Positions 9,681 to 62,922 of a stretch of 64,000 bases of DNA are shown here, piece by piece (within the stretch, counting starts at the first letter, position 1; each line of letters begins with the position of its first letter). The DNA is from Macrostomum lignano (lineage: Eukaryota): contig NIVC01000221.1 in assembly GCA_002269645.1 (NCBI GenBank), forward strand, positions 434,001 through 498,000, written 5' to 3'. The notes below the pieces were generated by a model. The model saw only the letters and a list, made by a program, of their open reading frames with translations, ran no database searches and was not told the DNA's origin. Both the position numbers and the translations under genes were made by a program.

Positions 9681-9867
9681 GGGATTGATAAAGTGCAACA
9701 ATATGCATGGTTGGCTTAAGGTATGAGAACTGGCAGTATAATTTTAACACGTAAATCTAATTAAAGCTGGGATTCGAACTCGCGACCTGTCTCACTCGGC
9801 AGTGGCAGCAGATTCGCCACTGGCAACAGTGGCATCAGTTTTCTCAGCTCCGTCACCAGAAGCGGGG

Positions 9868-22467: not shown

Positions 22468-23755
22468 CAGTGTTTCCACCCCGGCGAATTTTAATCGCTG
22501 GGCGATTTTAAATTGCTGAGCGATTTTTTGACATATGCAGCAATTTTCAGCGATGTTATATTCTTTTGAGGTAGAATCCCCCCTCCAGAATTACCTAGAG
22601 ACGTGACATTCTGGGTGTAGGAATCATGAGATTCTAGTTTAAGAATCATGAGATTCTGAGGGTAAGAATCGTGAGATTCTAAGGGTAAGAATCGTGAGAT
22701 TCTGAGGGTAAGAATCGTGAGATTCTAAGGGTAAGAATCGTGAGATTCTGAGGGTAAGAATCGTGAGATTCTGGGGGTAAAAATGGTGAGATTCTGAGGG
22801 TAAGAATCGTTAGTTCTGGGTGTAGGAATCGTGAGATTCTGGGGGTAAGAATCATGAGATTCTGAGGGTAAGAATCGTGTGATTCTGGGGGTAAGAATCG
22901 TGTGATTCTGGGGGTAAGAATCGTGTGATTCTGAGGGTAAGAATCATGAGATTCTGGGGGTAAGAATCATGAGATTCTGAGGGTAAGAATCGTGTGATTC
23001 TGGGGGTGAGAATCGTGTGATTCTGGGGGTGAGAATCGTGTGATTCTGGGGGTGAGAATCGTGTGATTCTGGGGGTAAGAATCGTGTGATTCTGGGGGTG
23101 AGAATCGTGTGATTCTGGGGGTGAGAATCGTGTGATTCTGGGGTAAGAATCGTGTGATTCTGGGGGTGAGAATCGTGTGATTCTGGGGGTGAGAATCGTG
23201 TGATTCTGGGGGTGAGAATCGTGTGATTCTGGGGGTGAGAATCGTGTGATTCTGGGGGTAAGAATCGTGTGATTCTGGGGGTAAGAATCGTGTGATTCTG
23301 GGGGTGAGAATCGTTAGATTCTGGGTGTAGGAATCGTGAGATTCTGGGGGTAAGAATCGTGTGATTCTGAGGGTAAGAATCGTGTGATTCTGGGGGTAAG
23401 AATCGTGAGATTCTGGGGGTAAGAATCGTGTGATTCTGGGGTAAGAATCGTGTGATTCTGGGGGTAAGAATCGTGTGATTCTGGGGGTAAGAATCGTGTG
23501 ATTCTGAGGGTAAGAATCGTTAGATTCTGGGTGTAGGAATCGTGAGATTCTGGGGGTAAGAATCGTGTGATTCTGGGGGTAAGAATCGTGTGATTCTGGG
23601 GGTAAGAATCGTGAGTTGCTGGGATAAGAATTGTGAGATTCTTGGGGTAAGAATCGTGAAATTCTGCGATAAGAATTGTGCTCAAAACAATGCTTTTTAT
23701 TTCAAAGTTGCAGCGATTTTTGCGAGCCAAGTGTCGGTGCCAACAAAAAAATGTG
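22468..23755. mobile_element. 1288-bp satellite-carrying insertion flanked by an 8-bp direct repeat TTAAGCAA
   Basis: TTAAGCAA at 22460-22467 and 23756-23763. The left end cagtgtttccacc is hAT-like, but the right end is not its inverse. Contains the 23-bp array. Confidence 0.55.
22610..23680 (+). repeat. 23-bp minisatellite GTG(T/A)GATTCTGGGGGT(A/G)AGAATC, a variant of the 12-21.5 kb array
   Basis: About 46 units, directly visible. Confidence 0.95.
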
Positions 23756-24509: not shown

Positions 24510-25250
24510 GATGAGTGAGAGTGCTGTGAGTGATGAGAGTGACATCTGAAGTGCCTGTGAGTGGTGTGACATCTGGAGTGTCTATGAGTGATGAGAGTGA
24601 CATCTGGAGTGCCTTGAGAGGTGAGAATGACATCTGGAGTGCCTATGAGTGATGAGAGTGACATCTGGAGTGCCTTGAGAGGTGAGAGTGACATCTGGAG
24701 TGCCTGTGAGTGGTGAGAGTGACATCTGGATTGCCTGTGAGTGGTGAGAGTGACATCTGGAGTGCCTGTGAATGGTGAGAGTGACATCTGGAGTGCCTGT
24801 GAGTTGTGAGAGTGACATCTGGAGTGCCTGTGAGTGACGAGAGTGACATCTGGAGTGCCTGTGAGTTGTGAGAGTGACATCTGGAGTGCCTGTGAGTTGT
24901 GAGAGTGACATCTGGAGTGCCTGTGAGTGGTGAGAGTGACATCTGGAGTGCCTATGAGTGGTGAGAGTTACATGGAGTGCCTGTGAGTGGTGAGAGTGAC
25001 AACTGGAGTGCCTGTGAGTGGTGAGAAGGACATCTGGAGTGCCTGTGAGTTGTGAGAGTGACATCTGGAGTGCCTATAAGTGACGAGAGTGACATTTGGA
25101 GTGCCTGTGAGTGGTGAGAGTGACATCTGGAGTGCCTGTGAGTGGTTAGAGTGACAACTGGAGTGCCTGTGAGTGGTGAGAAGGACATCTGGAGTTCCTG
25201 TGAGTGATAAGAGTGACACCTGAAGTGCATATTAGTAATGAGAGTGATAT
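24510..25250 (+). repeat. 31-bp minisatellite GAGAGTGACATCTGGAGTGCCTGTGAGTGGT
   Basis: About 23 units, directly visible. Confidence 0.95.
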
Positions 25251-25384
25251 CTACGTTCACATTATGTGACACTCAAAGCAACTGAGATTTACACCCTAAA
25301 TGCTAGAAAGAAACAGCGAGACTCTCTGTGACACTCAGTCACACCCGGAGTGACTTACTTCCCTTAAGTGTCACTTAAGTGATA

Positions 25385-30807: not shown

Positions 30808-31708
30808 CCCAGCACTCCAGTTTCTCATGAACTCCCCAACACGTCTGTTTCTCATGAACTCCCCAGCACTCCAGTTTCTCATGAATTCACCCAGCACTCC
30901 AGCTTTTCATGAATTCACCCAGCACTCCAGTTTCTCATGAATTCCCCAGAACTCCAGTTTCTCATGAATTCACCCAGCACTCCAGTTTCTCATGAATTCC
31001 CCAGCACTCCAGTTTCTCATGAATTCACCCAGCACTCCAGTTTCTCATGAATTCACCCAGCACTCCAGTTTCTCATGAATTCACCCAGCACTCCAGTTTC
31101 TCATGAACTCCCCAACACGTCAGTTTCTCATGAATTCACCCAGCACTCCAGTTTCTCATGAATTCACCCAGCACTCCAGTTTCTCATGAACTCCCCAACA
31201 CGTCAGTTTCTCATGAATTCACCCAGCACTCCAGTTTCTCATGAATTCACCCAGCACTCCAGTTTCTCATGAATTCACCCAGCACTCCAGTTTCTCATGA
31301 ATTCACCCAGCACTCCAGTTTCTCATGAACTCCCCAACACGTCAGTTTCTCATGAATTCACCCAGCACTCCAGTTTCTCATGAATTCACCCAGCACTCCA
31401 GCTTTTCATGAATTCACCCAGCACTCCAGTTTCTCATGAATTCACCCAGCACTCCAGCTTTTCATGAATTCACCCAGCACTCCAGTTTCTCATGAATTCA
31501 CCCAGCACTCCAGCTTTTCATGAATTCACCCAGCACTCCAGTTTCTCATGAATTCACCCAGCACTCCAGTTTCTCATGAACTCCCCAGCACTCCAGCTTC
31601 TCATGAATTCACCCAGCACTCCAGTTTCTCATGAACTCCCCAGCACTCCAGCTTCTCATGAATTACCCAGCACTCTAGTTTCTCATGAATTCCCCATTTC
31701 TCATGAAG
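30808..31708 (-). repeat. 28-bp minisatellite CCAGCACTCCAGTTTCTCATGAATTCAC
   Basis: About 32 units. The reverse complement contains GAATTCATGAGAAACTGG, the core of the 20-bp array. Confidence 0.95.
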
Positions 31709-34223: not shown

Positions 34224-34960
34224 ATGTTTTCACAAAGCTTTGCTGTCAGCTACTTGCTGATGTGGGTGGTGTTCGGAAGCTGCTTGACTTCGGTGCCGCC
34301 TCATCCGACGGCATTCCGCTACATCGGTTGCTTTGTGGATAAAAGGGACCCGACATGACAGGTCTCGTTGGAGTCGCTACATTCGGTCCGTATTCAACAT
34401 ATCCCGGATGGCCATCGCTCGTACGAAACACTTCAATGACGCTGCAGCTGTGCAGCCAGATCTGCGCTTCAGTACTTCGGTGCGAGGTACGGTGAATACT
34501 GCTGCTGTGGCAACAGCTACGGCTCTTTCGGTCCAGCCCCGGCTAGCGACTGCTCGTATAGATGCCAAGGAAACTTTACTCAAGTGTGTGGCGCAGACAT
34601 GAGGAACTCATGAAACGAAAATGTCTACAAAAATGTCTACTCAAAAGGTAGGCACATCCTGTTCTGACATTTTCTTAACCCTGGTTCAAAGCGATTCAAT
34701 CACAAACTTTGCAGTCGGCCGGGCGATGACCAAGCTGGCGGTTTCTGCCATGCCGAGCATCTCAGCTTCACTGAGCTCCATCACCCACAGCAGCGTCTCT
34801 GCCAACAGCGCCATCCAGTGCGCTGCCGCCTGCCAGCGAAGCCCGGACTGTCAGGGCTGCGCCTTCGTGCCTTCGAGCCGCATGTGCCGCCTGTTAAGAT
34901 TCACCGCTGTGCCCACTGAGGTGGCCAGCGAGGCTGAGTGGTTCTGGATGAAGCACTTAA
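34224..34960 (+). pseudogene. WSC-PAN family unit 3 (pseudogene)
   Basis: A 1-bp deletion near 34350 gives TGA at 34356. There is an 11-bp deletion near 34468 and a TGA at 34611. The intron 34648-34714 (gtaggc...tttgcag, phase 1) is retained. The PAN exon is recognisable but its stop is lost (WMKHLSL...). Confidence 0.88.
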
Positions 34961-38616: not shown

Positions 38617-39568
38617 TTTATCTGCTTAACTAGCTGCTGGCTACTTAGCACTTTAGTTCTGCATCAGATCCCTTTATTAATCAGGCGTTGAGCATTCTGT
38701 GGATTTTCTGTGCTACCAAGAACACACACATTCTTCACCGGCCAAGATTTCTAGGAAAATCAAGTGTAGCTTTCATGGACTTCAGCTGTCCATGGAAGTA
38801 AAAGCGCCCAGTTGCCAAAGCAGCTCCAAGGTTTTCCTCTATTTTTAACTCTAAAAAAGAGAAGTTTTTTAGTTTTTCTTCTTTTAACATCGCTTCTTCA
38901 TCGATTTTAAAAGCAAACAACGGCTTGCATCTGCGGATGCATTTCTTCTTTGTTTCTCGAATTTCTGCAGCTAACTTTTTCTGCACAAGTCTGACTAAAA
39001 GACTCATTCACAGGTGCTGAACGCTGCATCAGTTACCAACCGGAAAAGCTCCTGCAGACAATGCATTGGGTTTGCTTTCTCATGACAGAGTCAGAATCGC
39101 ACAAGCAAACTTGGGATGGACAGATAGACAGCACCTGAATAGAAGGCTTCCTTCAACTTTTCTGTTTTTTAAAGGGAACTCACAGCTTATGCATCCCACA
39201 TTCTTCTACATCCAGAGATAGGTAATATTTATGTATCCAATTGTGCAAGCCTATTTGCTATAAATACATGCATATCTGCAAAATATAAGAATTAAGAGTG
39301 AATCAGCCTAAATTGTTATCGATAGCCAGAAAGCATTAAAAAATATTTGTATTTTTTGTTTTTCTATAGCTACTCAGATATTAGATTTTTTCTCACAACT
39401 AAAAAAACATTGCAGGGTTAACATGAAACTTCATTTAGGACAGAGAAGGGGAACTCGATTTCAGGGTCAGCAGCAATGTTCTTGGGGGGTTCAATGTATC
39501 GATTTTAATAACGCTTATTGTAAATTGCCTCCGTATTCAGCACTTCAGTCTCTTGCGCCTTCACCCAG

Positions 39569-39713
39569 CTCAGCCTCAAAGCTTCATCCAGACCTACTCA
39601 GCCTCACAGCTTCATCCAGACCCACTCAGCCTCACAGCTTCATCCAGACCCACTCAGCCTCACAGCTTCATCCAGACCCACTCAGCCTCAAAGCTTCATC
39701 CAGACCCACTCAG
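39569..39713 (-). repeat. 28-bp stop-codon minisatellite of unit 4 (5 copies)
   Basis: Units start at 39569, 39597, 39625, 39653 and 39681. Confidence 0.95.
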
Positions 39714-40564
39714 CCTCGCTGGCCACCTCAGTGGGCACAGCGGCGAATTTCAGCAGGCGGCACATGGGGCTCGAAGGCACGAAGGCGCAGCCCTGACAGT
39801 CCGAGCTGCCGTAGCAGATGGTGGCGCATTCAACTGCGCTGCTGGCTGCGATGCTGCGGTGAGTGATGGAGCTCGCGGAGGCTGTGATGTTCGGCAGAGA
39901 CGTCAGGGGCAGTTTCGGCATCACCGGATCGACTGCGGAAGAGTTGGTTGGAAATATGGAATGCCGATATTACTTTTTATATTTTTACTGGTCAGATTAA
40001 TTCAAATATTGATGCTTAAATCTTCCAATGCGAACTGCATTTAAGGAAAACAGAGTGCTTTTAAGTCGTCCATCGCTAAATTAACATAACCCGTGTTCAT
40101 GCATGTACGAGCTGCGTTAATCCGGAACGCTTACTTGGTGAGTAAGTCAGTTCATAGATAGAATTTCTTGAAGCTCCACCGCAAATCTGAGCCGAGTTTC
40201 CGCTGCAAGCTGAGCTGCAGTCGCTAGCCGGTGCGATGCCGTGCGATCCATAGGTTGAGCCACAGCAGCAGAAGCTGTTGAGCTGAACTCCAAAGTAGCG
40301 AAATCGGCCGTAAGAGCACATCTGGCTGCACAGTTGCAGTGTCATCTTGGCGTCATCGTGACCGAATGCTGGGGCACCAGCGTGAGTCTCAAACTGTCCG
40401 AACTTTTTGACCCCCTGCAGTCCTACAAGATCTCGGTTGCCAACAGTGCCATCTACGTAGCAGCCGATGTGGCGAAACTCCAACGGTTGATGCGGCACCG
40501 CAGCAGCGGCGCAGCGTCCGGGACCGGCTGCCCAGCAGAGCAGCAGAGCGCAAATTTTCAGCAT
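39688..40564 (-). CDS. WSC-PAN family unit 4: secreted WSC + PAN/Apple-like protein, 224 aa (exons 40135-40564, 39688-39932)
   Basis: ATG at 40564 (MLKICALLLCW). Donor CCA A|gtaagc and acceptor ttccgcag|TC, phase 1. 430+245 nt, no internal stops. Confidence 0.9.
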
Positions 40565-40837
40565 TGGGGAAAATCCCAGAGAGTGGCCGAACGGCAGTTT
40601 CTGAGACGCTTCTTCTGATTCAGGTAAGAAGTTCAAGCAATATATTTGCTGCAAGAAGCCAATGAGGAATCACCCACCAATTCTGTGCCTGATTGTCTGA
40701 GGTTTTGCCCTAGTAGGAAAAAGAGATCGACCACTAGTGAGTAGCAAGACAAGAAGATTTAAGGCAAATCTCTGATACTTACTCGGATATATTATATTAA
40801 TCTATATATTAATACTCTGATCTCTGATGTGTTAATA

Positions 40838-41640
<803 letters not shown>

Positions 41641-46397: not shown

Positions 46398-46745
46398 ACC
46401 CACAGCCTCACAGCTTCATCCAAACCCACTCAGCCTCAAAGCTTCATCCAGACCCACTCGGCCTCACAGCTTCATCCAGACCCACTTAGCCTCACAGCTT
46501 CATCCAGACCCATTCAGCCTCACAGCTTCATCAAAACCCACTAAGCCTCACAGCTTCATCCAGACCCACTCGGCCTCACAGCTTCATCCAGACCCACTCG
46601 GCCTCACAGCTTCATCCATACCCACTCAGCCTCACAGCTTCATCCAATCCAAACCCACTCAGCCTCACAGCTTCATCCAGACCCACTCGGCCTCACAGCT
46701 TCATCCATACCCACTCAGCCTCACAGCTTCATCCAGACCCACTCA
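46398..46745 (-). repeat. 28-bp stop-codon minisatellite of unit 5 (about 12 copies)
   Basis: Same unit, directly downstream of the PAN exon. Confidence 0.95.
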
Positions 46746-49700
46746 GCCTCGCTGGCCACCTCAGCGGGCACAGCGGCGAATCTCAGCAGGCGGCACATGC
46801 GGCTCGAAGGCACGAAGGCGCAGCCCTGACAGTCCGGGCTGCCGTAGCAGATGGTGGCGCATTCAACTGCGCTGCTGGCTACGATGCTGCGGTGAGTGAC
46901 GGAGCTCGCGGAGGCTGTGATGTTCGGCAGAGACGTCGCGGGCAGTTTCGGCATCACCGGATCGACTGTAGAAGGGTTGGTTGAAAATATTAATATAGTA
47001 TTCTTAACAGCCAGCCTTTTTTCCAATTTCTAAAATTTCGAATATCACGGGGGACTTAAAAACGACATTTTAAAGTCGTTTTTTGGCTAAATTAAAGAAC
47101 CCTGTTTTTACGCATGAAAGAGCTGCGTCAATCCAAAATGCTTACTTGGTGAGTAAGTCAATTCATAGATGGAATTTCTGTAAGTTTCACCGCAAATCTG
47201 AGACGAGTTTCCGCTGCAAGCCAAGCTGCAGTGGCCAGCCGATGCGATGCCGTGCGCCGCGACCGACAATGAGAGAAGAATCATCGAAAACCGCATCTCT
47301 CTATCATTTGGGCTCCCTGAATGGGATAAATGGGGAAAAATGGGGATTTCATGTGAACTTAAGGCTCTGAAATGGAAGCGCTGGCCGATTGAGCCGGTTT
47401 CTCTATCGGATCTCTCTACTGGACCGACAATGAGACAAGAATCGTCGAAAACCGCATCTCTCTATCATTTGGTCTCCCTGAATGGAATAAATGGGGAAAA
47501 ATGGGGATTTCATGTGAACTTATGGCTCAAAGAATCCAGTCTGAGGATCGTCCCGTTCACTGACTGCTATTGAGTCAAATACCAGTAGGCTGGCTACGCT
47601 CTCCCGCTTTTCTGTTGAGTGCGCGTTCGCCGCAATCAAGCAGAACAGGTGTATTCATGAGCGGCATGAGCCATACCAGTGGCAGCAGCCAGCTGAATTC
47701 AGTACATCTAGTCGGCTGGATGTCATTATCGACAACTGTATTGCCAAATACAACCGCTCGCACATTGGATTCCCACTGAATAAAACGCTGCCAAAGTCAT
47801 GGAATGACAGCTCACTTTTTTAGTTTGGTCAGAATTTTACCAGGCGCATGTTTCTCAGCAACGAATTCGATCCGATTGAAGGTGAGAACTACCTGTGTGA
47901 CGCGACCCGAACTCCTATCGAAGGGTCGAGGCGCTGGTCACCAGTTGATGTGCTAGATCCTGAGTCCACAGGCTTTCCTCGAATTGAGATAGAAAACCTT
48001 CAGGAAGTAAGTGTGGGACCATTTCATGTACAGCAGTCTGAAAGCTATATCCAAAACATCCAGGTGCAACGCACGCTTGAGAATTTCGCCGGTGATACGT
48101 TGTTAGAGCTTGAAGACCTTGCATCGCAGCTGCCTCAATCGATGCGCTGCTGGAAATTCCGGCAAGAACAGCAGGCAAGGAACTGGAAAAAAGAAATTCG
48201 GCAACGGGCAACCGTCGTGGATATTTATATCCGTTGTGTTTTCGAGGCACACATCTCGAACATATCGAGTCCTTCTTCGCCTCAACGATTTACCGAATGG
48301 AAACCCTTTTGGATTCCACGATGCCGGTCTAAGGAGGCTACATGCCTACTACTCCTCGTCCAAAGTGGGTAGCCGAACAGCTGGCTGTGACTGCCATGTA
48401 ATGGCAGTTCTTTTGCTCCTAGGTCATTATGCCTACGACCCAGATTCCTTTCGCCAACGATATCCTGAGCGCCGCTTCGTTGATACACAGCTTCCTAAAA
48501 GCCTCAACGCTAATCCTTACTCCTTTCTACCTGCTGAGGAAAATGTTAGAACAGAGCCTCGTCAAGAGCATCGTTCAAAGGAAAGGATGCCAAACAAACA
48601 TCATCAAGAAGTTCAGAGCCGCAGCCTCTCTGTGGACTAAGAAATAGCGGAGCAGACTGCTATGCCAATTCTGCCATTCAGCTTCTTTACTGGATGGAGC
48701 AGAAGGGCCCATTAATGAGACGGGACATAGCTAGCGACTTGCAAAGATCTGTAGAGCTACTTTTTCATCAAATGCTAGCTCTAAAAAATACTTCCGCCGC
48801 AGAAGTACAAGGAATTATCAGGCGCATCTTCCCGGCAGATTTGCTGCTGGTGAACAGCACTGCTTTCTGGAGTTCTTGGAAGCCCTGCTTTCGACTCTCT
48901 CGGTTGCTAATGGCGCCCTTGCAGATGTTACTGCGCTCCGTAATTGTCGACGTTGTGGCTACAGCGCAGCCTCGATTCCAACAGGAACAATCAGTGAACA
49001 AATTCTTTGCGTTCCTCTCTCAGAGTACAGCAGGGCTCCGATTAGCCTTTACGATCTTTTGGAAGAACGACTGCGACCACGCATTTCGCAGTGCGGCCAA
49101 TTAGGATGCGAAGGCTTGATTGAAAGCAGATTATTCCATCAGCGGCCAAGTTTGCAATTATTTACTTCAGCAGGACTCCAGAAAACTATAATACCGAAAA
49201 AATCAACACCCAAATACGGTACTCACCAAGAGCTGAGAGTAATTCCGACTTCGGCAGTCCTGTGATAGTGATATGCCACTATGGCAGATCTCTCCATCGC
49301 GGGCACTACACTACCAGTGTTTGGCATGACAATGTTGGTGGTTGATTGGCGATTCCAGAATTGAGCCCAACTGCAATCCGTTTCTCCGGGATGCACAAAA
49401 TATCGCTGCTGTAGTTGTGCAAAAGAAAGACTAATCGTGCTTTCACTAGATCGTAGACCCGAGCTAGACAAGTTTTAGTTTTTCCTTGCGATGCACTCCA
49501 ACATTCGAAAGACTTATACCTACCTATGAACTTTTGCTTGCCACTACTTGCTCTGTTCCATGTACTTTTGCTTGTTACTATTTGCTCATGCACTTTTGGT
49601 TCCCATTATTTGCAAATGCACTGTATTCATACAGTACTAAAATCGTGCATTTTAATATTTCATTAAACCTGTTCAAAAAAGTCTAATACAGATACTAAAA

Positions 49701-52700
49701 AGATATTTTAACGTTAAATATAGTTACAGAAATCATTAAAACATTCTTTAACATAAAGACTCAAGGCAGCTTTGCCGGCCTGCTTCATCGGTCAGATTCT
49801 CATTGTCGGTCCAGTAGAGAGATCCGATAGAGAAACCGGCTCAATCGGCCAACGCTTCCATTTCAGAGCCTTAAGTTCACATGAAATCCCCATTTTCCCC
49901 ATTTATCCCATTCAGGGAGCCCAAATGATAGAGAGATGCGGTTTTCGACGATTCTTCTCTCATTGTCGGTCCAGTAGAGAGATCCGATAGAGAAACCGGC
50001 TTAATCGGCCACCGCTTCCATTTCAGAGCCTTAAGTTCACATGAAATCCCAATTTTTCCCCATTTGTCCTATGCGGAAGCGGCCGGGGTGGAAGAAAGAT
50101 CAATTACGCTTTTCTTGTCTATTTTGGGTCTGAATAGTGAGAATTTTGCAGCGGTTTGGTTGCTGGACTCACGGCTTCCAAATCGCGCTTAAGTTCAAAT
50201 CCTCTTTCGAATATCACGGGGACTTAAAAACGACATTTTAAAGTCGTATTTTGGCTAAATTAAAGAACCCTGTTTTTACGCATGAAAGAGCTGCGTCAAT
50301 CCAAAATGCTTACTTGGTGAGTAAGTCAATTCATAGATGGAATTTCTGTAAGTTTCACCGCAAATCTGAGACGAGTTTCCGCTGCAAGCCAAGCTGCAGT
50401 GGCCAGCCGATGCGATGCCGTGCGCCGCGACCGACAATGAGAGAAGAATCATCGAAAACCGCATCTCTCTATCATTTGGGCTCCCTGAATGGGATAAATG
50501 GGGAAAAATGGGGATTTCATGTGAACTTAAGGCTCTGAAATGGAAGCGCTGGCCGATTGAGCCGGTTTCTCTATCGGATCTCTCTACTGGACCGACAATG
50601 AGACAAGAATCGTCGAAAACCGCATCTCTCTATCATTTGGTCTCCCTGAATGGAATAAATGGGGAAAAATGGGGATTTCATGTGAACTTATGGCTCAAAG
50701 AATCCAGTCTGAGGATCGTCCCGTTCACTGACTGCTATTGAGTCAAATACCAGTAGGCTGGCTACGCTCTCCCGCTTTTCTGTTGAGTGCGCGTTCGCCG
50801 CAATCAAGCAGAACAGGTGTATTCATGAGCGGCATGAGCCATACCAGTGGCAGCAGCCAGCTGAATTCAGTACATCTAGTCGGCTGGATGTCATTATCGA
50901 CAACTGTATTGCCAAATACAACCGCTCGCACATTGGATTCCCACTGAATAAAACGCTGCCAAAGTCATGGAATGACAGCTCACTTTTTTAGTTTGGTCAG
51001 AATTTTACCAGGCGCATGTTTCTCAGCAACGAATTCGATCCGATTGAAGGTGAGAACTACCTGTGTGACGCGACCCGAACTCCTATCGAAGGGTCGAGGC
51101 GCTGGTCACCAGTTGATGTGCTAGATCCTGAGTCCACAGGCTTTCCTCGAATTGAGATAGAAAACCTTCAGGAAGTAAGTGTGGGACCATTTCATGTACA
51201 GCAGTCTGAAAGCTATATCCAAAACATCCAGGTGCAACGCACGCTTGAGAATTTCGCCGGTGATACGTTGTTAGAGCTTGAAGACCTTGCATCGCAGCTG
51301 CCTCAATCGATGCGCTGCTGGAAATTCCGGCAAGAACAGCAGGCAAGGAACTGGAAAAAAGAAATTCGGCAACGGGCAACCGTCGTGGATATTTATATCC
51401 GTTGTGTTTTCGAGGCACACATCTCGAACATATCGAGTCCTTCTTCGCCTCAACGATTTACCGAATGGAAACCCTTTTGGATTCCACGATGCCGGTCTAA
51501 GGAGGCTACATGCCTACTACTCCTCGTCCAAAGTGGGTAGCCGAACAGCTGGCTGTGACTGCCATGTAATGGCAGTTCTTTTGCTCCTAGGTCATTATGC
51601 CTACGACCCAGATTCCTTTCGCCAACGATATCCTGAGCGCCGCTTCGTTGATACACAGCTTCCTAAAAGCCTCAACGCTAATCCTTACTCCTTTCTACCT
51701 GCTGAGGAAAATGTTAGAACAGAGCCTCGTCAAGAGCATCGTTCAAAGGAAAGGATGCCAAACAAACATCATCAAGAAGTTCAGAGCCGCAGCCTCTCTG
51801 TGGACTAAGAAATAGCGGAGCAGACTGCTATGCCAATTCTGCCATTCAGCTTCTTTACTGGATGGAGCAGAAGGGCCCATTAATGAGACGGGACATAGCT
51901 AGCGACTTGCAAAGATCTGTAGAGCTACTTTTTCATCAAATGCTAGCTCTAAAAAATACTTCCGCCGCAGAAGTACAAGGAATTATCAGGCGCATCTTCC
52001 CGGCAGATTTGCTGCTGGTGAACAGCACTGCTTTCTGGAGTTCTTGGAAGCCCTGCTTTCGACTCTCTCGGTTGCTAATGGCGCCCTTGCAGATGTTACT
52101 GCGCTCCGTAATTGTCGACGTTGTGGCTACAGCGCAGCCTCGATTCCAACAGGAACAATCAGTGAACAAATTCTTTGCGTTCCTCTCTCAGAGTACAGCA
52201 GGGCTCCGATTAGCCTTTACGATCTTTTGGAAGAACGACTGCGACCACGCATTTCGCAGTGCGGCCAATTAGGATGCGAAGGCTTGATTGAAAGCAGATT
52301 ATTCCATCAGCGGCCAAGTTTGCAATTATTTACTTCAGCAGGACTCCAGAAAACTATAATACCGAAAAAATCAACACCCAAATACGGTACTCACCAAGAG
52401 CTGAGAGTAATTCCGACTTCGGCAGTCCTGTGATAGTGATATGCCACTATGGCAGATCTCTCCATCGCGGGCACTACACTACCAGTGTTTGGCATGACAA
52501 TGTTTGGTGGTTGATTGGCGATTCCAGAATTGAGCCCAACTGCAATCCGTTTCTCCGGGATGCACAAAATATCGCTGCTGTAGTTGTGCAAAAGAAAGAC
52601 TAATCGTGCTTTCACTAGATCGTAGACCCGAGCTAGACAAGTTTTAGTTTTTCCTTGCGATGCACTCCAACATTCGAAAGACTTATACCTACCTATGAAC

Positions 52701-53894
52701 TTTTGCTTGCCACTACTTGCTCTGTTCCATGTACTTTTGCTTGTTACTATTTGCTCATGCACTTTTGGTTCCCATTATTTGCAAATGCACTGTATTCATA
52801 CAGTACTAAAATCGTGCATTTTAATATTTCATTAAACCTGTTCAAAAAAGTCTAATACAGATACTAAAAAGATATTTTAACGTTAAATATAGTTACAGAA
52901 ATCATTAAAACATTCTTTAACATAAAGACTCAAGGCAGCTTTGCCGGCCTGCTTCATCGGTCAGATTCTCATTGTCGGTCCAGTAGAGAGATCCGATAGA
53001 GAAACCGGCTCAATCGGCCAACGCTTCCATTTCAGAGCCTTAAGTTCACATGAAATCCCCATTTTCCCCATTTATCCCATTCAGGGAGCCCAAATGATAG
53101 AGAGATGCGGTTTTCGACGATTCTTCTCTCATTGTCGGTCCAGTAGAGAGATCCGATAGAGAAACCGGCTTAATCGGCCACCGCTTCCATTTCAGAGCCT
53201 TAAGTTCACATGAAATCCCAATTTTTCCCCATTTGTCCTATGCGGAAGCGGCCGGGGTGGAAGAAAGATCAATTACGCTTTTCTTGTCTATTTTGGGTCT
53301 GAATAGTGAGAATTTTGCAGCGGTTTGGTTGCTGGACTCACGGCTTCCAAATCGCGCTTAAGTTCAAATCCTCTTTCGAATATCACGGGGACTTAAAAAC
53401 GACATTTTAAAGTCGTATTTTGGCTAAATTAAAGAACCCTGTTTTTACGCATGAAAGAGCTGCGTCAATCCAAAATGCTTACTTGGTGAGTAAGTCAATT
53501 CATAGATGGAATTGCTGTAAGCCCCACCGCAAATCTGAGACGAGTTTCCGCTGCAAGCCAAGCTGCAGTGGCCAGCCGATGCGATGCCTTGCGATCCATA
53601 GGCCGAGCCGCAGCAGCAGAAGGCCGCAGACTGAACTCCAAAGTAGCGAAATCGGCCGTAAGAGCACATCTGGCTGCACAGTTGCAGTGTCATCTTGGCG
53701 TCATCGAAACCGAACGCTGGGGCGAGAGGGTGAGTCTCAAACTGTCCGAACTTTTTCACCCCCTCCAGTCCTACAAGATCTCGGTTGCCAACAGCGCCAT
53801 CCACGTAGCAGCCGAGGTGGCGAAACTCCAACGGTTGAGGCGGCACCGCAGCAGCGGCTGCCCAGCAGAGCAGCAGAGCGCAGAGTTTCAGCAT
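46721..53894 (-). CDS. WSC-PAN family unit 5: 218 aa if exon 53483-53894 is spliced to 46721-46965 across a 6.5-kb intron
   Basis: Intact leader + WSC exon (412 nt, donor A|gtaagc) and intact PAN exon (245 nt, cttctacag|TC), phase-compatible. The intron holds two element copies and two decoy exon ends, so this splicing is inferred. Confidence 0.6.
47146..47256 (-). pseudogene. Duplicated 3' end of the WSC exon with intact donor (copy 1; copy 2 at 50314-50424)
   Basis: HGIASAGHCSLACSGNSSQICGETYRNSIYELTYSP|gtaagc. Part of a direct repeat of about 220 bp at 47036, 50205 and 53374. Confidence 0.9.
47257..50204 (+). mobile_element. Defective element X, copy 1: inverted arms of tandem 161-bp units around a decayed transposase-like interior
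   Basis: 161-bp unit at 47261 and 47422, and inverted at about 49797-50068. The interior peptides FPRIEIENLQEVSVGPFHVQQSESYI and SRHTSRTYRV...AYYSSSKVGSRTAGCDCHVMAVLLLLG resemble the C-terminal SWIM-like region of Harbinger/ISL2EU-related transposases (by eye). The frames are broken. Confidence 0.65.
50425..53373 (+). mobile_element. Defective element X, copy 2 (tandem, near-identical)
   Basis: Offset 3168-3169 nt. The ORF track repeats identically except around a 1-bp indel near 52503. Confidence 0.7.
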
Positions 53895-54443: not shown

Positions 54444-56511
54444 TCACAGCTTCATCCAGACCCACTCAGTCTCGCTGGCCACCTCAGCGGGCCCAGCGGC
54501 GAATCTCAGCAGGCGGCACATGCGGCTCGAAGGCACGAAGGCGCAGCCCTGACAGACCGGGCTTCGCTGGCAGGTGGCGGCGCATTGGATGGCGCTCTTC
54601 GCCGTGGAGTTGCGATAGGCAGAAGCGCTCGCCAAGACTGAGATGCTTGGCATGTCGGTCACTGGTAGCTTGGTCATGATTTTTTCAGCTGTGGGAGAAT
54701 TGCAAGGTTTACTCAAAATTATAGGAATCAATCAGTCAACCAAACGTAGGTTTTGTAGTTTTCAAATGATGAATGTCCCATTAAGGCATAAAGAATCTTA
54801 TGGTTGACTGAAAGAATCCATTAAGGCATATCCCAGATCCTGTCGATTTCAGGGGTCCTTAGACTAGTACTCTACTAGCGGCGCTCTGATGTGCCAGCGG
54901 CCCAGGCTCGATTCCAAGTGCGGTCAAATTAATTTGGTGCTAAATTGGAATCTCGGCTTGGCTCTGCTCGTGTAATTAGCGGCCTTGAAGGCCTATCACC
55001 CAGGCGCAGTGAAGTGTAAATTCCTAACCATTTTATAAAAGGTTGTTTTTCAAAAAATCGACAATCAACAAAAAGGAACACCAACACCAACTTGCACCGT
55101 GAAAAGGGTTTCTTCACGGTAAGAGGGTCAAATCCAAAGTTAGAACCCCACAGAATAAAGATAGTTTGGGCCATAGACAGCCCAAGACTGAGAGACAGGC
55201 AAACCTTTAAGTGGACATCCAAACTGGCAATTTACAGCCATAGAGATCGATGTGCCTTTCTGTTAGATTCTACACAGTTGTCAGAGCTTGCCTTCACATT
55301 AGCATTACGGATTGTTATTGTATGGTTATTCCCCCAGTTCTATTTAAGTTTTTAAAACACAATCACACTTAGGTGTTAATCAACTTATTTATAAATGTAA
55401 ATTGCAAGTTTAGACGTCCACTCCCGCGCGCCTAAAAATTTGATTGCCTCTTCCTAGTTAAATCTTCCGTCTTCCGACTTACCTGACTGGCTGAGGCTAA
55501 CTTGGAAGAAGTGGGTGATTTAACTAGGAAGACGGAAGAATCGTTTAATTTATTGAGCGTCGCGGAAATTTAGGACCTATACCTGAATTTTACTACTGCG
55601 GTTAGTAGTTGAATAAAATTTAGTAAGATGATTAATTATTTTAGTTATGAAAAGCCCTAGAAGTAGTAGGAATAACAATTGAAGTACAGCTTTGTTTAAG
55701 TGCTTTTAATTCAAACGGTCAGTTTAACTAGGGCTCGATCTTTAATTTCACTCATTCTTAGTTTAACCCTGAATATTCACAGCTAAACTAGAAATTCAAC
55801 TAGGAATAGGCTTAATTTTTTTAAGCGGCCTTCCAGGTTTGCCTGTCTCTCAGTCAGGCTTCTCAGTGCTGTCTATGGCCCCATCTATATCTTTATTCTA
55901 TGAGATTTTTAGTCGGACAAAAGCAGTATCAGTATAATTCGCTTTATTTCAGGCCTCCGGTAGCATTTCTTGTTTCATACCCATACTTGTTTCAGATAAA
56001 ATTAGGAAGCTCAACATTCAAGCTTCAGTGAAACTGACATGTTTTGTGAGTTTAGCCAACTTTCAATGCATGCAAGCGATTACCTACTAGGCTTATAGAC
56101 GATTTCAAAGATGGAATTGGTCCAGCTGGCACCGCACACCTGCGACGCGTTCCCACTGCAAAGAGCAGCGCATTTTCTCTCCTCGACCGCGCCAAGCGAC
56201 CCGTAAGCAGATCCGCAGCAGCAAAAAAAAGCTGCTTGCACACCAAAATAGCGGAACCGACCGTATGAGCAGATCCGGCTGCACTTCTGCAGTGTCATTT
56301 TCCTGCTCTTGACGAAGGCGCTGTACTTGCGGTCAACTGTGTACCGGTCTAACGCAATGACGCCTTCCAGTCCTTGCAGGTCTCGATCGCTGTTACTTCT
56401 GCTGTCAGCGAAGCATCCGATGTAGCGAACTTCTCGAAACTGGGGCGGCTCAGAAGCCAGCAACGGCACCCATGCAGACAGGAAGGCAACTAAAATTATA
56501 GGCGCTTGCAT
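54444..56511 (-). CDS. WSC-PAN family unit 6: divergent secreted WSC + PAN protein, 222 aa (exons 56088-56511, 54444-54688)
   Basis: MQAPIILVAFLSAWVPLLAS leader and VRYIGCFAD...CCCG...CGASWTNSIF. Donor CCT A|gtaggt and acceptor ctcccacag|CT, phase 1. 424+245 nt; 1399-nt intron. Confidence 0.87.
54888..55020 (+). mobile_element. Truncated SINE family 1 copy in the unit-6 intron
   Basis: gtgccagcggcccaggctcgattccaagtgc...ggaatctcggcttggctctgctcgtg...aggcgcagtgaagtgta matches about 29295-29425. Confidence 0.8.
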
Positions 56512-57299: not shown

Positions 57300-57598
57300 T
57301 ATCCAGACCCACTCAGCCTCACAGCTTCATCCAGACCCACTCAGCCTCACAGCTTCATCCAGACCCACTCAGCCTCACAGCTTCATCCAGACCCACTCAG
57401 CCTCACAGCTTCATCCAGACCCACTCAGCCTCACAGCTTCATCCAGACCCACTCAGCCTCACAGCTTCATCCAGACCCACTCAGCCTCACAGCTTCATCC
57501 AGACCCACTCAGCCTCACAGCTTCATCCAGACCCACTCAGCCTCACAGCTTCATCCAGACCCACTCAGCCTCACAACATCATCCAGACCCGCTCAGTC
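57300..57598 (-). repeat. 28-bp stop-codon minisatellite of unit 7 (about 10 near-perfect copies)
   Basis: Same unit. Confidence 0.95.
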
Positions 57599-58762
57599 TC
57601 GCTAGCCACCTCAGCGGTGAATCTAAGCAGGCGGCACATGCGGCTCGAAGGCACAAAGGCGCAGCCCTGACAGTCCGGGCTTCGCTGGCAGAAGGAGGCG
57701 CACTGGAAGACACTGCTGACTTCTGTGCTAAGGGCGGTGACGGATTTCAGCTTCTTGTAGCTTGAAACGGTTGGCATTTTTACAACTTGCAGTCTTGTCA
57801 GCAGAGAGCGATCTGAGTGTGGTGGTACATGTGTTAGGATAGGAATATTGTCAATTGCTAAGATTAATTACTGTCAAATTTACGTTTTTACCCAGCATTC
57901 AAACTCGGACTTACCCACATGATAAGTTACTTCATGCATAAATAGAGTTGCTCACTTCCCCACCGCATATCTGAGATACATTGCCGCTGCATTTGGATTG
58001 GCAGTTGCTCTCAAAATCCTTTCCATTTGATCCGTACATCCTGCCGCAGTAGCAAAACGAATCGAATTGACAACCAAAGTAGCGGAACCGCCCATATGAG
58101 CAGCTCGGGCTGCACAGCTCCACAGTGAGCGAATTACTTTCAAAAAACCGCCGACAGCATTTAAATGGCCCAGCGAGACCAAAGCCCTGGGCTAACGCCC
58201 CCGACTACCGGCAATCCCGTGCGGTTGTCCCCTGTCCTTCCCCCGCCTTGCGCTGGGCCCTGCTTGGACTCTACTGCAGGGACATCAGGGCGGTGAACAT
58301 GGCCGTCATGGCTGTTTTGCCAGGCATCGTCACCTCCATGGAAAAATCCGCAGTGAGGAATGCCCCTTCTGCCTCTCCGGTGTCGAGAATGCGGAGCACT
58401 TTATCTGTGAATGCCCCGCCTTTACTAGGCTCACCTACCTCGGCCCAAACCCGGATCTCTCCGATGTTTTCTGGCCCGAGAATCTCTGCCAGCTCGTCCG
58501 CTACCCAAGGGCTACCGGGTGGACGACAAACCACCTCCTGGACTCTCTGGAGGGGGACTGCGCTGCGGACACCGGCACCACTGGAACTCCCTGCGCGACA
58601 CCGCAGCAAGAGACCAGAGCCCAAAATTCCTCTCAGATCTTTGTAACTTTCCGCATAGCAACCGACGTAGCGAATGCGTTGCGATTGCGGTGGTACGGAA
58701 GTGGTGCACAGCCTACCAAGAGCTGCACAGAACAGCAGGAGATTAATTGGTAGTATTTTTAT
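57571..58762 (-). pseudogene. WSC-PAN family unit 7 (pseudogene)
   Basis: Reconstructed (I)[50 protein letters not shown]|[34 protein letters not shown]... The presumed start reads ATA. A 422-bp insertion interrupts exon 1, and a 4-bp frameshift (TAT GCA TGA) precedes the donor at 57914. Acceptor cacactcag|AT at 57813; the PAN exon is open. Confidence 0.85.
58188..58609 (-). mobile_element. 422-bp GC-rich insertion with a 13-bp target-site duplication
   Basis: gagacca(a/g)agccc at 58175-58187 and 58610-58622. Removing the insert and one repeat restores the WSC frame. Confidence 0.8.
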
Positions 58763-59794: not shown

Positions 59795-60145
59795 CCCAGA
59801 CCCGCTCAGCCTCACAGCTCCATCCATACCCACTCAGTCTCACAGTTTCATCCAGACCCTCTCATTCTCACAGCCTCATCCAGACCCGCTCAGTCTCACA
59901 GCTCCATTCATACCCACTCAGTCTCACAGTTTCATCCAGACCCTCTCATTCTCAAAGCCTCATCCAGACCCACTCAGCCTCACAGCTTCATCCAGACCCT
60001 CTCATTCTCACAGCCTCATCCAGACCCGCTTAACCTCACAGCTTCATCCAGACCCACTCAGTCTCACAGTTTCATCCAGACCCACTCAGCCTCATAGCTT
60101 CATCCAGACCTACTCAGCCTCACAGCTTCATCCAGACCCATTCAG
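59795..60145 (-). repeat. 28-bp stop-codon minisatellite of unit 8 (about 12 diverged copies, with an 84-bp higher-order duplication)
   Basis: Lies between the stop (60120) and AATAAA (59769-59774). Confidence 0.92.
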
Positions 60146-61066
60146 CCTCGCTGGCCACCTCAGCGGGCACAGCGGTGAATCTCAGCAGGCGGCACATGCG
60201 GCTCAAAGGCGCGAAGGCGCAGCCCTGACAGTCCGGGCTTCGCTGGCAGGCGGCAGCGCACTGGATGGCGCTCTTGGCATAGACGCTGCTGTGAGTGATG
60301 GAGCTCAGTGAAGCTGAGATGCTCGGCATGGCAGAAGCTGGCAGCTTGGTCACTGCTTGGCCAGCTACAAAAGTTGTATTAGAACAGAATTTAGAAATTT
60401 TTACTCAAAAACTAGAAATAATAAATCTGTTTACGAGTGTATGGAAATATCTGGGATTTATTCAACGAACACCGATTGCCCTGACTTTTCCAGTTAGAAT
60501 TTGCAGTTTGGTTTTAAAAAGAATACTTTCAGTATGAAATCATAAAAAATCCTGCTTTGTGTTACGGTTTTTGATGTTTTAATGAGGTTGCCGTCCTGAC
60601 AGGCAAAACAAAATTTGCATGATAAAAAGTCCCTCTCACCGTGATTGTAAATATTTTCGTAGACGGAGTTCCTCATGTCTCCACCACAAATTTGAGATGA
60701 GTTTCCCTTGCATTTATACGAGCAGTCACTAGCCGAGGCTGTACCGAACGAGCCGTAGGTGTTGCCGCAGCAGCAGTATCCACCGTACCTCGCTCCGAAG
60801 TACCGAAATCTCCCATAAGCGCAGATCTGGCTGCACAGCTGCAGCGTCATCGAAGCGCCTTGCGCAATTGATGGCCATCCTGACAAGATCGAATACGGAC
60901 CGAATGTAGCGACTCCAACGAGGCCCGTCATGTCGGGGTGGTCCGTAGTGTCCACGAAGCAGCCGATGTAGCGGAATGTCGTCGGATGAGGCGGCACGGA
61001 AGTCAAGCAGCTTCCGAACGCTGCCCACATCAGCAAGTAGCCTACAGAAAAGCTTTTTGAAAACAT
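60120..61066 (-). CDS. WSC-PAN family unit 8: secreted WSC + PAN protein, 223 aa (exons 60640-61066, 60120-60364)
   Basis: MFSKSFSVGYLLMWAAFGSCLTS leader and FRYIGCFVD...YCCCG...ICGGDMRNSVY. Donor CAC G|gtgaga and acceptor cttttgtag|CT, phase 1. 427+245 nt. Confidence 0.9.
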
Positions 61067-62059: not shown

Positions 62060-62510
62060 CAGTTTCATCCAGACCCACTCAGCATCACAGCTTCATCCAG
62101 ACCCACTCAGCTTCACAGCTTCATCCAGATCCGCTCAGCCTCACAGCTTTAATTAGACCCACTCAGCTTCACAGCTTTATCCAGATCCACTCAGCTTCAC
62201 AGCTTCATTCAGACCCACTCAGTTTCACAGTTTCATCCAGATCTGCTCAGTCTCACAGCTTTAATTAGACCCACTCAGCTTCACAGCTTTATCCAGATCC
62301 ACTCAGCTTCACAGCTTCATTCAGACCCACTCAGTTTCACAGTTTCATCCAGATCTGCTCAGTCTCACAGCTTCATCCAGACCCATTCAGCCTCACAGCT
62401 TCATCCAAATCCGCTCAGCCTCACAGCTTCATCCAGACCCATTCAGCCTCACAGCTTCATCCAGATCCGCTCAGCCTCACAGCTTCATCCAGACCCACTG
62501 AACCTCACAG
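62060..62510 (-). repeat. 28-bp stop-codon minisatellite of unit 9 (about 16 copies, with a 112-bp higher-order duplication)
   Basis: Same unit, diverged. Confidence 0.92.
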
Positions 62511-62922
62511 ACTCAAGGTGCAGCCCAGACAGTCCGGGCTTCTCTGGCAGGTGGCAGCTCACTCGATGACTTCGCTGACTTCTGCGCTAAGGTCAGTTAC
62601 GGATCTCAGCTTCATAAAGCTTGAAATGCTCGGCATTTTTCGCCCCTTGCAGCCATGTCAGCAGAGAGCGATCTGAGTGTGATACACGCGTTAGGATAGG
62701 ACATTCGATCAATTTTTAAGACCAATTATTGTCAAAGATATGCTTTTCTTACTGAGCAGTCAAATAGACGCCCCCCCCCCTACTTACCCACAGGGTAAAT
62801 TACTTCATAAGCAGAGTCGCTCAGTTCAAGGCCGCACATCTGAGACACATTTTCGCTGCATTCGGATTGACAGTTGCTCTCCAATTCCTTCCAGTTGGAT
62901 CCGCTAGTCCGGCCGCAGGAGC
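62504..62922 (-). pseudogene. WSC-PAN family unit 9 (pseudogene, closest to unit 7)
   Basis: WSC 3' half SCGRTSGSNWKELESNCQSECSENVSQMCGLELSDSAYEVIYPV G|gtaagt (donor at 62787); the 5' half is missing. The PAN exon has a +1 frameshift, TGA in place of the first Cys, and a deletion running into the array. Confidence 0.85.

What the first reader, a model, noticed from the sequence alone, without database searches (positions are those of the whole stretch)
47036..53590. D-X-D-X-D arrangement: inverted-repeat element tandemly amplified with a piece of the host gene
Seen: a segment D of about 220 bp (half the intron plus the 3' end of the WSC exon) occurs at 47036, 50205 and 53374, with the 2.95-kb element X between copies. 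Only the third D continues into a complete exon. This is far longer than a normal target-site duplication. Inference: it fits recombinational integration and amplification of a circular D+X molecule, or transposition-associated re-replication. The result may be a chimeric gene joining the 53.5-kb WSC exon to the 46.7-kb PAN exon.
Basis: partly seen in the sequence, partly recalled or inferred. Interest (0 to 1): 0.7.

Follow-up and report, generated by a model that had tools for sequence, protein, structure and literature searches.

The report
Transposon doubled inside a flatworm gene
A dead DNA transposon sits in a Macrostomum lignano secreted-protein gene, flanked by a 221-bp copy of the gene, and recombination between those copies doubled it; the gene stays intact, so this is an instructive but fairly ordinary rearrangement.

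Summary
47036-50424 and 50205-53593 align at 99.8% over 3390 columns, giving D1-X'-D2-X'-D3 (D = 220-221 bp, X' = 2948-2949 bp).

The genome is Macrostomum lignano. The host is an ordinary two-exon WSC+PAN gene on the minus strand, one of eight in the window. Its product matches an annotated protein at all but one residue, so it is not chimeric. Its intron has grown from about 170 bp to 6.5 kb.

X' is a non-autonomous DNA transposon. It has long inverted arms made of 160-bp subrepeats. It also carries a frameshifted remnant of a PIF/Harbinger-Spy-type transposase with a C-terminal ubiquitin-protease (USP) domain.

- The right end abuts the only AAA|TTT site in the gene, the Spy-group target.
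- The left arm is truncated and joined to the exon through a 4-bp filler.
- No short target-site duplication exists.

My reading is that D-X'-D arose from a transposition-linked break-repair event. This step is inferred.

D2 is a mosaic: D3-like on the left, D1-like on the right. The two X' copies differ by one base. This fits a recent unequal crossover between D copies, and reintegration of a D+X' circle would give the same product.

An assembly miscount cannot be excluded with these tools.

The parts
46724..46965 (-). Host gene exon 2 (PAN/Apple-like part, ends ...WVWMKL; stop codon at 46721-46723). The AG acceptor lies at 46966-46967 on the minus strand.
   Evidence: product equals P0001 except one residue
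46966..47035 (-). L: the part of the original intron outside D. It ends in ...CTAAAA.
   Evidence: runs on into D1 without a break, as in the paralogue at 4022-4673
47033..47038 (.). AAATTT, the only copy in the 834-bp reconstructed empty gene. Its centre (47035|47036) is exactly the L|D1 boundary. It is the inferred transposase target.
   Evidence: Spy-group target AAA|TTT without duplication, PMC4122938
47036..47256 (-). D1 (D_L): 109 bp of intron plus the last 112 bp of a WSC-exon copy with its GT donor. It keeps the paralogues' bases at 3 of the 5 sites where it differs from D3 and the paralogues can be aligned.
47257..47260 (.). CCGC: 4-bp filler between the end of D and the left arm. It is repeated at 50425-50428.
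   Evidence: does not match the subrepeat sequence expected at that phase
47261..47528 (+). Left inverted arm of X' copy 1 (1.67 units of a 161-bp subrepeat). It starts mid-array and has no counterpart of the outermost 74 bp or more of the right arm.
47545..49400 (+). Core of X' copy 1: a frameshifted remnant of the transposase C-terminal part (catalytic-E motif, a conserved Cys/His motif) followed by a USP/UCH peptidase domain from about 48620. The roughly 350 N-terminal codons are missing.
   Evidence: Pfam UCH E = 1.8e-11; 76% identity to P0015 350-439
49798..50204 (+). Right inverted arm of X' copy 1 (about 2.5 subrepeat units). The outer 132 bp (S, 50073-50204) is a diverged third unit in register. 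The arm ends ...CTTAAGTTCAAATCCTC directly against TTT of D2.
   Evidence: (z = 6.7-7.8, 0 of 500 shuffles)
50205..50424 (-). D2: mosaic copy. It matches D3 at D positions 14 and 45, and matches D1 at positions 142, 150-152 and 217.
50425..53373 (+). X' copy 2, identical to copy 1 except one extra T at 52503, which keeps the USP reading frame (WWLIGDSRIEP). Left arm 50429-50696, right arm 52967-53373.
53374..53593 (-). D3 (D_R): the functional copy. Intron part 53374-53482, exon part 53483-53593.
53483..53894 (-). Host gene exon 1 (signal peptide plus WSC domain). ATG at 53894, donor GT at 53482-53481 on the minus strand.

Best explanation
A non-autonomous DNA transposon (X') entered a Macrostomum lignano WSC+PAN gene through a faulty, transposition-linked break-repair event. 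The element belongs to a PIF/Harbinger-ISL2EU-Spy-type (PHIS-like) family whose transposase carries a C-terminal USP protease domain.

Step 1 (inferred). The right end of X' was joined by transposase chemistry at the gene's only AAA|TTT site, in the intron. The left end was truncated and was joined by host end-joining, with a 4-bp CCGC filler, 221 bp away in exon 1. Two routes give this result. One is an integration with the two strand breaks 221 nt apart. The other is misrepair of an excision break in which the two ends copied different templates. Either way, filling the gaps duplicated the 221 bp in between and produced L-D-X'-D-R.

Because the right-hand D restores a complete exon 1 with its splice donor, the whole insert became intronic and the gene survived.

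Step 2 (supported by sequence). Later, an unequal homologous exchange between the left and right D copies added a second X' and the mosaic D2. The D copies were by then about 3% diverged, and the crossover fell between D positions 45 and 142.
For: Layout and identities.

Host gene and empty site:
- The window's two exons give a 218-aa protein equal to P0001 (M. lignano A0A1I8J1U2) except one residue.
- A paralogue is contiguous across both the L|D and the D|R boundaries.
- The window holds eight family genes, and five of the seven other genes have introns of roughly 130-300 bp.

X' is a transposon:
- It has inverted arms of 268 and 407 bp made of 160-bp subrepeats.
- Its core is 76% identical to P0015 across the catalytic-E motif. 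It matches the C-terminal 280 aa of 1016-1075-aa proteins. Some of those proteins hit DDE_Tnp_4, HTH_Tnp_4 and zf-C2H2.
- A frame-corrected composite hits Pfam UCH at 1.8e-11.

Canonical right junction: AAATTT occurs once in the 834-bp empty gene, exactly at L|D. Its window frequency is 5.9e-4 per position. Spy elements insert at AAA|TTT without a duplication (PMC4122938).

Non-canonical left junction: the left arm lacks at least 74 bp relative to the right arm, there is a CCGC filler, and there is no short target-site duplication.

Two ages: D1 and D3 differ at 6 bases plus 1 indel in 221 bp. X'1 and X'2 show 0 substitutions in 2948 bp.

Mosaic D2.
Against: - Step 1 is inferred from a single locus. 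No other copy of X' is in the window, and none was retrievable from the collections I could reach. The true termini and target preference of this family are therefore unknown.
- The family is not a classic Spy. The closest relative has an apparent D(93)D(80)E spacing (by eye) against Spy's D(79-80)D(44-62)E. The right end, read inward, is GAGGATTTG, a near miss to Spy's GGANNNNG.
- The Pfam DDE_Tnp_4 hits are partial and reach the curated cut-off in only one relative (P0030).
- The AAA|TTT match was noticed after the fact.
- The mosaic pattern of D2 rests on five variable positions, one of them a homopolymer length. A pattern with at most one switch has a chance probability of about 0.3 if sites were assigned at random.
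- An in-silico mis-join of reads could in principle give the same mosaic.
Confidence: 0.55

Rival explanations
1. A circular D+X' molecule. Recombination between D_L and D_R within one chromatid releases a circle carrying X' and a hybrid D. The circle then reintegrates by homologous recombination, or is rolled out and reintegrated, giving D-X'-D-X'-D.
For: The circle's D would be D3-left plus D1-right, exactly the observed D2. The product is identical to that of unequal crossover.
Against: It needs two events where one crossover suffices. It presupposes an existing D-X'-D, so it cannot explain the origin. Nothing in the sequence is specific to a circle.
Confidence: 0.12
2. Alternative transposition of the hybrid-element-insertion or reversed-ends type, possibly with re-replication, after a normal intronic insertion at AAA|TTT. 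The right end on one sister chromatid and the left end on the other insert together 221 bp away, giving a tandem duplication with the element at its junction.
For: This route is known to give segment-transposon-segment structures in maize Ac/Ds and Drosophila P (PMC3744419). It predicts an intact AAATTT at L|D1 and the original right junction at X'|D2, and both are seen.
Against: The new left junction should carry an intact terminus at a canonical target. Here the arm is truncated, there is a 4-bp filler, and the target GTGCG|ATCC is not AAATTT. X' itself encodes no working transposase.
Confidence: 0.13
3. Replication template switching (FoSTeS/MMBIR) with no transposase involved. A fork left the gene at the end of D, copied 2.9 kb of a transposon copy elsewhere, and returned 221 bp upstream.
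For: A tandem duplication with a templated insert at its junction is a classic outcome. Both X' ends look like arbitrary cut points in an array of subrepeats, and no short target-site duplication exists.
Against: It does not explain why the return point is the only AAA|TTT in the gene. No microhomology is visible at either junction.
Confidence: 0.1
4. Assembly artefact. The true locus has one X' (D_L-X'-D_R) or another copy number, and the second unit was created by a mis-join or by polishing.
For: X'1 and X'2 are identical except for a homopolymer length, which is typical of long-read consensus error. The genome is a repeat-rich neopolyploid that is hard to assemble (PMC10733133, listed). A mis-join across D would also yield a mosaic D2.
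Against: A 221-bp overlap at 97% identity with non-matching flanks is too short for long-read overlappers. A 3.2-kb unit is easily spanned by single reads. There are no N or gap marks. Even so, the D-X'-D core would remain.
Confidence: 0.1

Closest known systems
[quoted passage not shown]
   Same: Relatives of the X' protein carry DDE_Tnp_4 and HTH_Tnp_4 signatures. X' has long inverted arms, and Spy terminal inverted repeats range from 9 to 1474 bp. The right end sits exactly at AAA|TTT with no duplication of a few bases.
   Different: The apparent catalytic spacing is D(93)D(80)E rather than Spy's. The arms are built of 160-bp subrepeats, whereas Spy long repeats were reported to have no subrepeats. 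The family has N-terminal C2H2 fingers, a conserved C-terminal Cys/His motif and, in some members, a USP domain. Only one of the two junctions is canonical here.
Tandem direct duplications made by alternative transposition (maize Ac/fAc reversed-ends transposition; Drosophila P hybrid element insertion) (PMC3744419)
   Same: A transposon sits at the junction of two direct copies of flanking host DNA. One junction is old and one is new.
   Different: Those cases have intact termini and a normal target-site duplication at the new junction, and usually span kilobases to megabases. Here the duplication is 221 bp and the new junction looks repair-made.
Non-allelic homologous recombination (unequal crossing-over) between flanking direct repeats
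   Same: Copy number rises from D-X-D to D-X-D-X-D. The middle repeat is a mosaic with a single switch point. The amplified units are near-identical while the outer repeats are older.
   Different: Nothing essential differs. The repeats are short (221 bp, 97% identical).
Pack-MULE-type gene-fragment capture (transduplication)
   Same: A host exon fragment lies next to a non-autonomous element with long inverted arms.
   Different: D lies outside the arms and runs on into the host gene at both outer borders. It is therefore flanking DNA and not cargo.

Membership tests
Ordinary target-site duplication of a cut-and-paste transposon | Short direct repeat of fixed length (0-11 bp) immediately outside matched termini | tested here: not met
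   Scan of all boundaries 47230-47275 x 50055-50215 for repeats of 5-12 bp. It found only four chance-level hits, none with inverted termini. The flanking repeat is 221 bp.
PHIS superfamily transposon | Transposase with an IS5/Harbinger-type DDE domain (Pfam DDE_Tnp_4) and an HTH | tested here: inconclusive
   X' keeps only the region from the catalytic-E motif onward. Among 13 relatives, 3 hit DDE_Tnp_4 (best 8.6e-8; only P0030 is above the cut-off) and 2 hit HTH_Tnp_4 below the cut-off.
PHIS superfamily transposon | Terminal inverted repeats | tested here: inconclusive
   The arms 47261-47528 and 50130-49866 align, with 95-98% identity in the inner part. The outermost ends do not match each other.
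Spy group | Insertion between AAA and TTT with no target-site duplication | tested here: inconclusive
   The right junction is ...CCTC|TTTCG, and the uninterrupted AAA|TTT is at L|D1. This is the only AAATTT in the gene. The left junction is GTGCG|CCGC and is not canonical.
Spy group | Terminal 5'-GGANNNNG-3' motif | tested here: not met
   The right end read inward is GAGGATTTGAAC, which is GGA plus three bases plus G, offset by 2. The left end is CCGCGACC.
Spy group | D(79-80)D(44-62)E spacing | tested here: not met
   P0015 gives D197, D291, E372, i.e. D(93)D(80)E. The residues were picked by motif, not by a structure.
Alternative-transposition tandem duplication | Transposon at the junction of two direct copies of flanking DNA | tested here: met
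Alternative-transposition tandem duplication | Intact terminus and a normal target-site signature at the new junction, plus a reciprocal deletion product | tested here: not met
   Truncated left arm plus a 4-bp filler. The reciprocal product cannot be tested.
Unequal crossover (NAHR) amplification | Middle repeat is a single-switch mosaic of the outer repeats, and the amplified units are younger than the repeats | tested here: met
Helitron | 5'-TC, 3'-CTRR with a hairpin, insertion between A and T, Rep/helicase | tested here: not met
   On the plus strand X' starts CCGCGACC and ends ...AAATCCTC; on the minus strand it starts GAGGATTT and ends ...GTCGCGG. The coding remnant is a DDE-type transposase plus USP.
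Gene-fragment capture (Pack-type) | Host fragment lies between the element's inverted repeats | tested here: not met
   D lies outside both arms and runs on into the host gene.
eccDNA reintegration | Circular X'+D molecules exist | not testable with these tools
   Needs wet-lab or read-level data.

The most novel reading that the evidence does not exclude
X' belongs to an undescribed group of PHIS-like transposons. The group would be marked by C2H2 fingers, a DDE_Tnp_4-like core, a conserved C-terminal Cys/His motif, a USP deubiquitinase domain and arms of 100-160-bp subrepeats. It is seen here in a flatworm and on marine metagenome contigs, and it may share Spy's AAA|TTT no-duplication target. 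On this reading, the 221-bp flanking duplication is the footprint of an uncoupled, one-end-canonical integration. That outcome has seldom, if ever, been documented in nature for eukaryotic DDE transposons, and here it rescued the gene it hit.
Probability: 0.25. Interest if true: 0.6.

Novelty: new member of a known kind. Interest (0 to 1): 0.4.

Why it matters
This locus preserves three things side by side in readable form:
- an apparently transposase-made junction;
- a repair-made junction;
- a later recombinational doubling.

It is therefore a compact natural example of how a transposon hit in an exon can be neutralised. The flanking duplication rebuilds the exon and turns the insert into an intron.

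It also shows how short flanking duplications seed further copy-number growth.

As a by-product, it points to a transposase family fused to a ubiquitin protease that I could not find described in the searchable literature.

For genome annotation of M. lignano, it warns that two decoy exon fragments with live splice donors sit inside a 6.5-kb intron.

Tried and rejected
- Short target-site duplications at any plausible boundary: none found.
- Other X' copies in the window, by sensitive BLAST: none found.
- tRNA or SINE origin of the 132-bp S segment, and any Rfam family in 46-55 kb: none found.
- S as ancestral intron sequence: not significantly similar to paralogue introns. It is instead a diverged arm subrepeat.
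- Word-indexed protein search with the X' composite: nothing. The full HMMER scan was needed.
- SWIM zinc finger in the Cys/His motif: no Pfam support.
- An independent assembly of the locus via the annotated protein: P0001 is not on record with a contig. The only family protein with an NCBI contig (P0007) is not encoded in this window.
- Termini and target site of the family from relatives' contigs L001-L007. The Tara contigs L001-L004 stop or part ways within their subterminal repeats, and none of the contigs shows a recognisable terminus, so no terminus could be read.
- Metagenome scans for close relatives or for the arm motif: nothing.
- Literature on a Harbinger-type transposase with a USP/UCH domain: nothing found.
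- Helitron and Pack-type capture readings: rejected on anatomy.
Full report
**1. Observation**

The repeat finder and a self-BLAST of 44-57 kb show that 47036-50424 aligns with 50205-53593 at 99.76% over 3390 columns. They also show that 47036-47256 aligns with 53374-53593 at 96.8%.

A base-by-base comparison gives three results:
- The two X' copies differ only by TT versus TTT at 49335/52503.
- D1 differs from D2 only at D positions 14 (G-run length) and 45 (T/A).
- D2 differs from D3 only at positions 142 (T/G), 150-152 (TTT/CCC) and 217 (G/T).

The window contains no N.

**2. Host gene and organism**

Exon 1 lies on the minus strand (53894 to 53483) and encodes a signal peptide and a WSC domain (Pfam E = 3e-13). 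It ends at a GT donor. Exon 2 starts at 46965 after an AG acceptor and encodes a PAN/Apple-like module.

The spliced product of 218 aa hits Macrostomum lignano proteins. UniRef A0A1I8J1U2 (P0001) is identical except for one residue (S/F) over its 205 aa. Eleven further M. lignano WSC- or Apple-domain proteins were retrieved, and the full-length ones inspected have the same WSC+PAN layout.

tblastn finds eight family genes in the window. In five of the seven other genes the intron between the two exons is roughly 130-300 bp; in the plus-strand gene at 34.2-35.0 kb it is about 90 bp, and in the gene at 54.4-56.5 kb about 1.4 kb. Here it is 6.5 kb.

The paralogue at 4022-5099 gives single alignments that run straight across the L|D1 boundary and across the D3|R boundary. 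The paralogue at 39563-40665 matches D, the exon beyond it and exon 2, and has no X' either. D is therefore host DNA, made of 109 bp of intron plus the last 111 bp of exon 1, and X' is the insert. The junction of the 53.5-kb exon to the 46.7-kb exon is the normal gene, not a chimera.

**3. What X' is**

X' has inverted arms. The left arm is 47261-47528, 1.67 units of a 161-bp subrepeat. The right arm starts at 49798.

The 132 bp between 50072 and D2 (S) is a diverged third subrepeat in register with the array (global z = 6.7, local z = 7.8, 0 of 500 shuffles). The right arm therefore runs to 50204, and the whole of X' is element DNA apart from a 4-bp CCGC at its left edge.

The best arm-to-arm alignment pairs 47261 with 50130. 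The left arm thus has no counterpart of at least the outermost 74 bp of the right arm, and it begins in mid-array.

The core has no long open frame, but stop-free stretches on the plus strand are informative:
- A frame-corrected composite hits Pfam UCH (PF00443) at 1.8e-11.
- A full HMMER scan of 1.84 billion representatives found 37 relatives.
- 47545-47820 is 76% identical to P0015 residues 350-439, which include an R..VE..F..IKQ motif.
- The core aligns with residues 735-1010 of the 1016-aa P0067.
- Proteins of 1044-1075 aa share the region around a conserved Cys/His motif. P0019 and P0061 add a C-terminal UCH domain.
- Among 13 relatives, 3 hit DDE_Tnp_4, 2 hit HTH_Tnp_4 and 5 hit C2H2 fingers.
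- A JGI contig (L006) is 68% identical to X' in DNA over 941 bp. It shows that X' lacks the first ~350 codons.

X' is therefore a deleted, frameshifted, non-autonomous member of a PIF/Harbinger-ISL2EU-Spy-like family with a USP domain. All the relatives whose source was looked up come from metagenome or sequencing-run assemblies, several of them marine Tara Oceans samples. Their contigs also show arrays of 90-200-bp subterminal repeats, but none includes a recognisable terminus.

**4. The two kinds of junction**

No direct repeat of 5-12 bp flanks any plausible pair of X boundaries.

The right end, ...CTTAAGTTCAAATCCTC, is a diverged copy of a motif present in every subrepeat. It abuts TTT, the first bases of D. 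On the other side, L ends in AAA(A).

AAATTT occurs once in the 834-bp gene rebuilt from the two flanks, and its centre is exactly the L|D boundary. In the window the hexamer occurs 38 times in 64,000 positions.

Spy elements, one branch of the superfamily suggested by the DDE_Tnp_4 hits, insert between AAA and TTT without duplicating anything (PMC4122938). The other groups use 2-3-bp targets (PMC4482050).

I take this as evidence that the right-end junction was made by the family's transposase at its preferred site. Three caveats apply:
- The match was noticed afterwards.
- The terminal GGANNNNG motif is only approximated.
- The apparent D(93)D(80)E spacing of P0015 is not Spy's.

The left junction, GTGCG|CCGC|GACCGAC, lies in GC-rich exon sequence. 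It involves a truncated arm and has a 4-bp filler, which is the signature of host end-joining.

**5. How D-X'-D arose (inferred)**

Suppose the 3'-OH of the right end is joined to the top strand at AAA|TTT, and the left end is joined to the bottom strand at the D|R point 221 nt away. Each strand then carries D once as a single-stranded gap. Filling both gaps gives L-D-X'-D-R with exactly the observed polarity: the end of D lies against the left end of X', and the right end of X' lies against the start of D. This is the logic of a target-site duplication with a 221-nt stagger.

Two related routes give the same product:
- Repair of an excision break at a normal intronic insertion, in which the left end copied D from an empty allele and the right end copied X' from the sister chromatid before end-joining.
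- Hybrid-element or reversed-ends alternative transposition, which is known to place a transposon between two direct copies of flanking DNA (PMC3744419).

I cannot separate these routes with one locus. All share one canonical and one repair-made junction.

Pure template switching without transposase remains possible but does not explain the AAA|TTT coincidence.

Because D3 rebuilds a full exon 1 with its donor, everything from S to D1 is now intronic. This probably explains why the allele survived.

**6. How it was doubled (supported)**

D1 and D3 differ at 6 bases plus one indel in 221 bp. X'1 and X'2 have no substitution in 2948 bp. The doubling is therefore much younger than D-X'-D.

At the five differing bases where the paralogues can be aligned, D3 carries changes away from the paralogues' base at three (positions 142, 151, 217). 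The annotated protein P0001 shows the same D3-type residues there. D1 keeps the paralogues' base at those three and has two changes of its own (positions 150, 152).

D2 equals D3 at the two left sites and equals D1 at the right sites. This is what a single unequal exchange between D_R of one chromatid and D_L of the other predicts, with the crossover between D positions 45 and 142.

A circle excised by D_L x D_R recombination and reintegrated would give the same sequence. With only five informative positions, the mosaic is consistent with this model rather than proof of it.

**7. Artefact**

A false extra unit cannot be excluded without reads. The single X'1/X'2 difference and one D difference are homopolymer lengths, as expected from long-read consensus error, and the genome is a difficult neopolyploid. 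However, a 221-bp overlap at 97% identity is an unlikely basis for a mis-join, and the D-X'-D core would stand in any case.

**8. Verdict**

What is there is a known kind of event. A transposon-associated flanking duplication was followed by unequal crossover, in a new and unusually legible instance. It involves a transposon family, a DDE_Tnp_4-like transposase with a USP domain, for which I found no description in the searchable literature.

Noticed in passing
window 47545-49400 and 50713-52570; loci L001-L007: The transposase family behind X' has C2H2 fingers, weak HTH_Tnp_4/DDE_Tnp_4 signatures and a conserved C-terminal Cys/His motif (GCCSHVA..LLG). Some members also have a USP/UCH deubiquitinase domain. 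Full-length intronless ORFs of 1016-1075 aa occur on metagenome contigs, several of them from marine Tara Oceans samples. I found no paper describing such a fusion.
   Followed up: partly
window 47108-47296 (-), and the same at 50276-50464: An ATG inside the X' left arm (antisense) opens a reading frame, MRFSMILLSLSVAAHGIAS..., that runs in frame into the D1/D2 exon fragment and its live splice donor. Its N-terminus looks like a signal peptide. If a transcript started there, it could encode a short WSC-tail plus PAN protein.
   Followed up: no
window 4022-4148, 39563-39717, 46403-46750, 57301-57600, 59796-60149, 62060-62510: A 28-bp minisatellite (4.5 to 16 copies) starts at the stop codon of six of the eight WSC+PAN genes. 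The last codons ...WVWMKL and the stop lie in its first unit. Copy number differs between paralogues.
   Followed up: partly
window 4122-4992, 34248-34953 (+), 39691-40564, 46724-53894, 54447-56493, 57574-58144, 60123-61042, 62424-62917: This is a cluster of eight WSC+PAN secreted-protein genes, seven on the minus strand, with 37-88% protein identity to the gene studied. The functional exon copy (D3) carries three amino-acid changes (H to Q, R to S, T to A) relative to the paralogue residues kept in the dead copies D1 and D2.
   Followed up: partly
window 7416-9683, 12012-21477, 22608-23680: There are large satellite arrays: a 19-bp unit x 117, a 22-bp unit x about 430 (9.5 kb, GC skew about +0.68) and a 23-bp unit x 47. 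The 22- and 23-bp units are related (both contain ATTCTGGG...TAAGAATCGTG).
   Followed up: no
window 49335 vs 52503: The only X'1/X'2 difference (TT vs TTT) decides whether the USP frame runs on through WWLIGDSRIEP (copy 2) or stops (copy 1). It could be a real mutation or a homopolymer consensus error.
   Followed up: partly
window 5949-6894, 10341-11480, 24519-25252, 30808-31696, 40835-41639: Further tandem arrays are present: 151-bp x 6, 30-bp x about 38, 31-bp x 24, 28-bp x 32 and (ATAG) x 200. The window is very repeat-rich.
   Followed up: no
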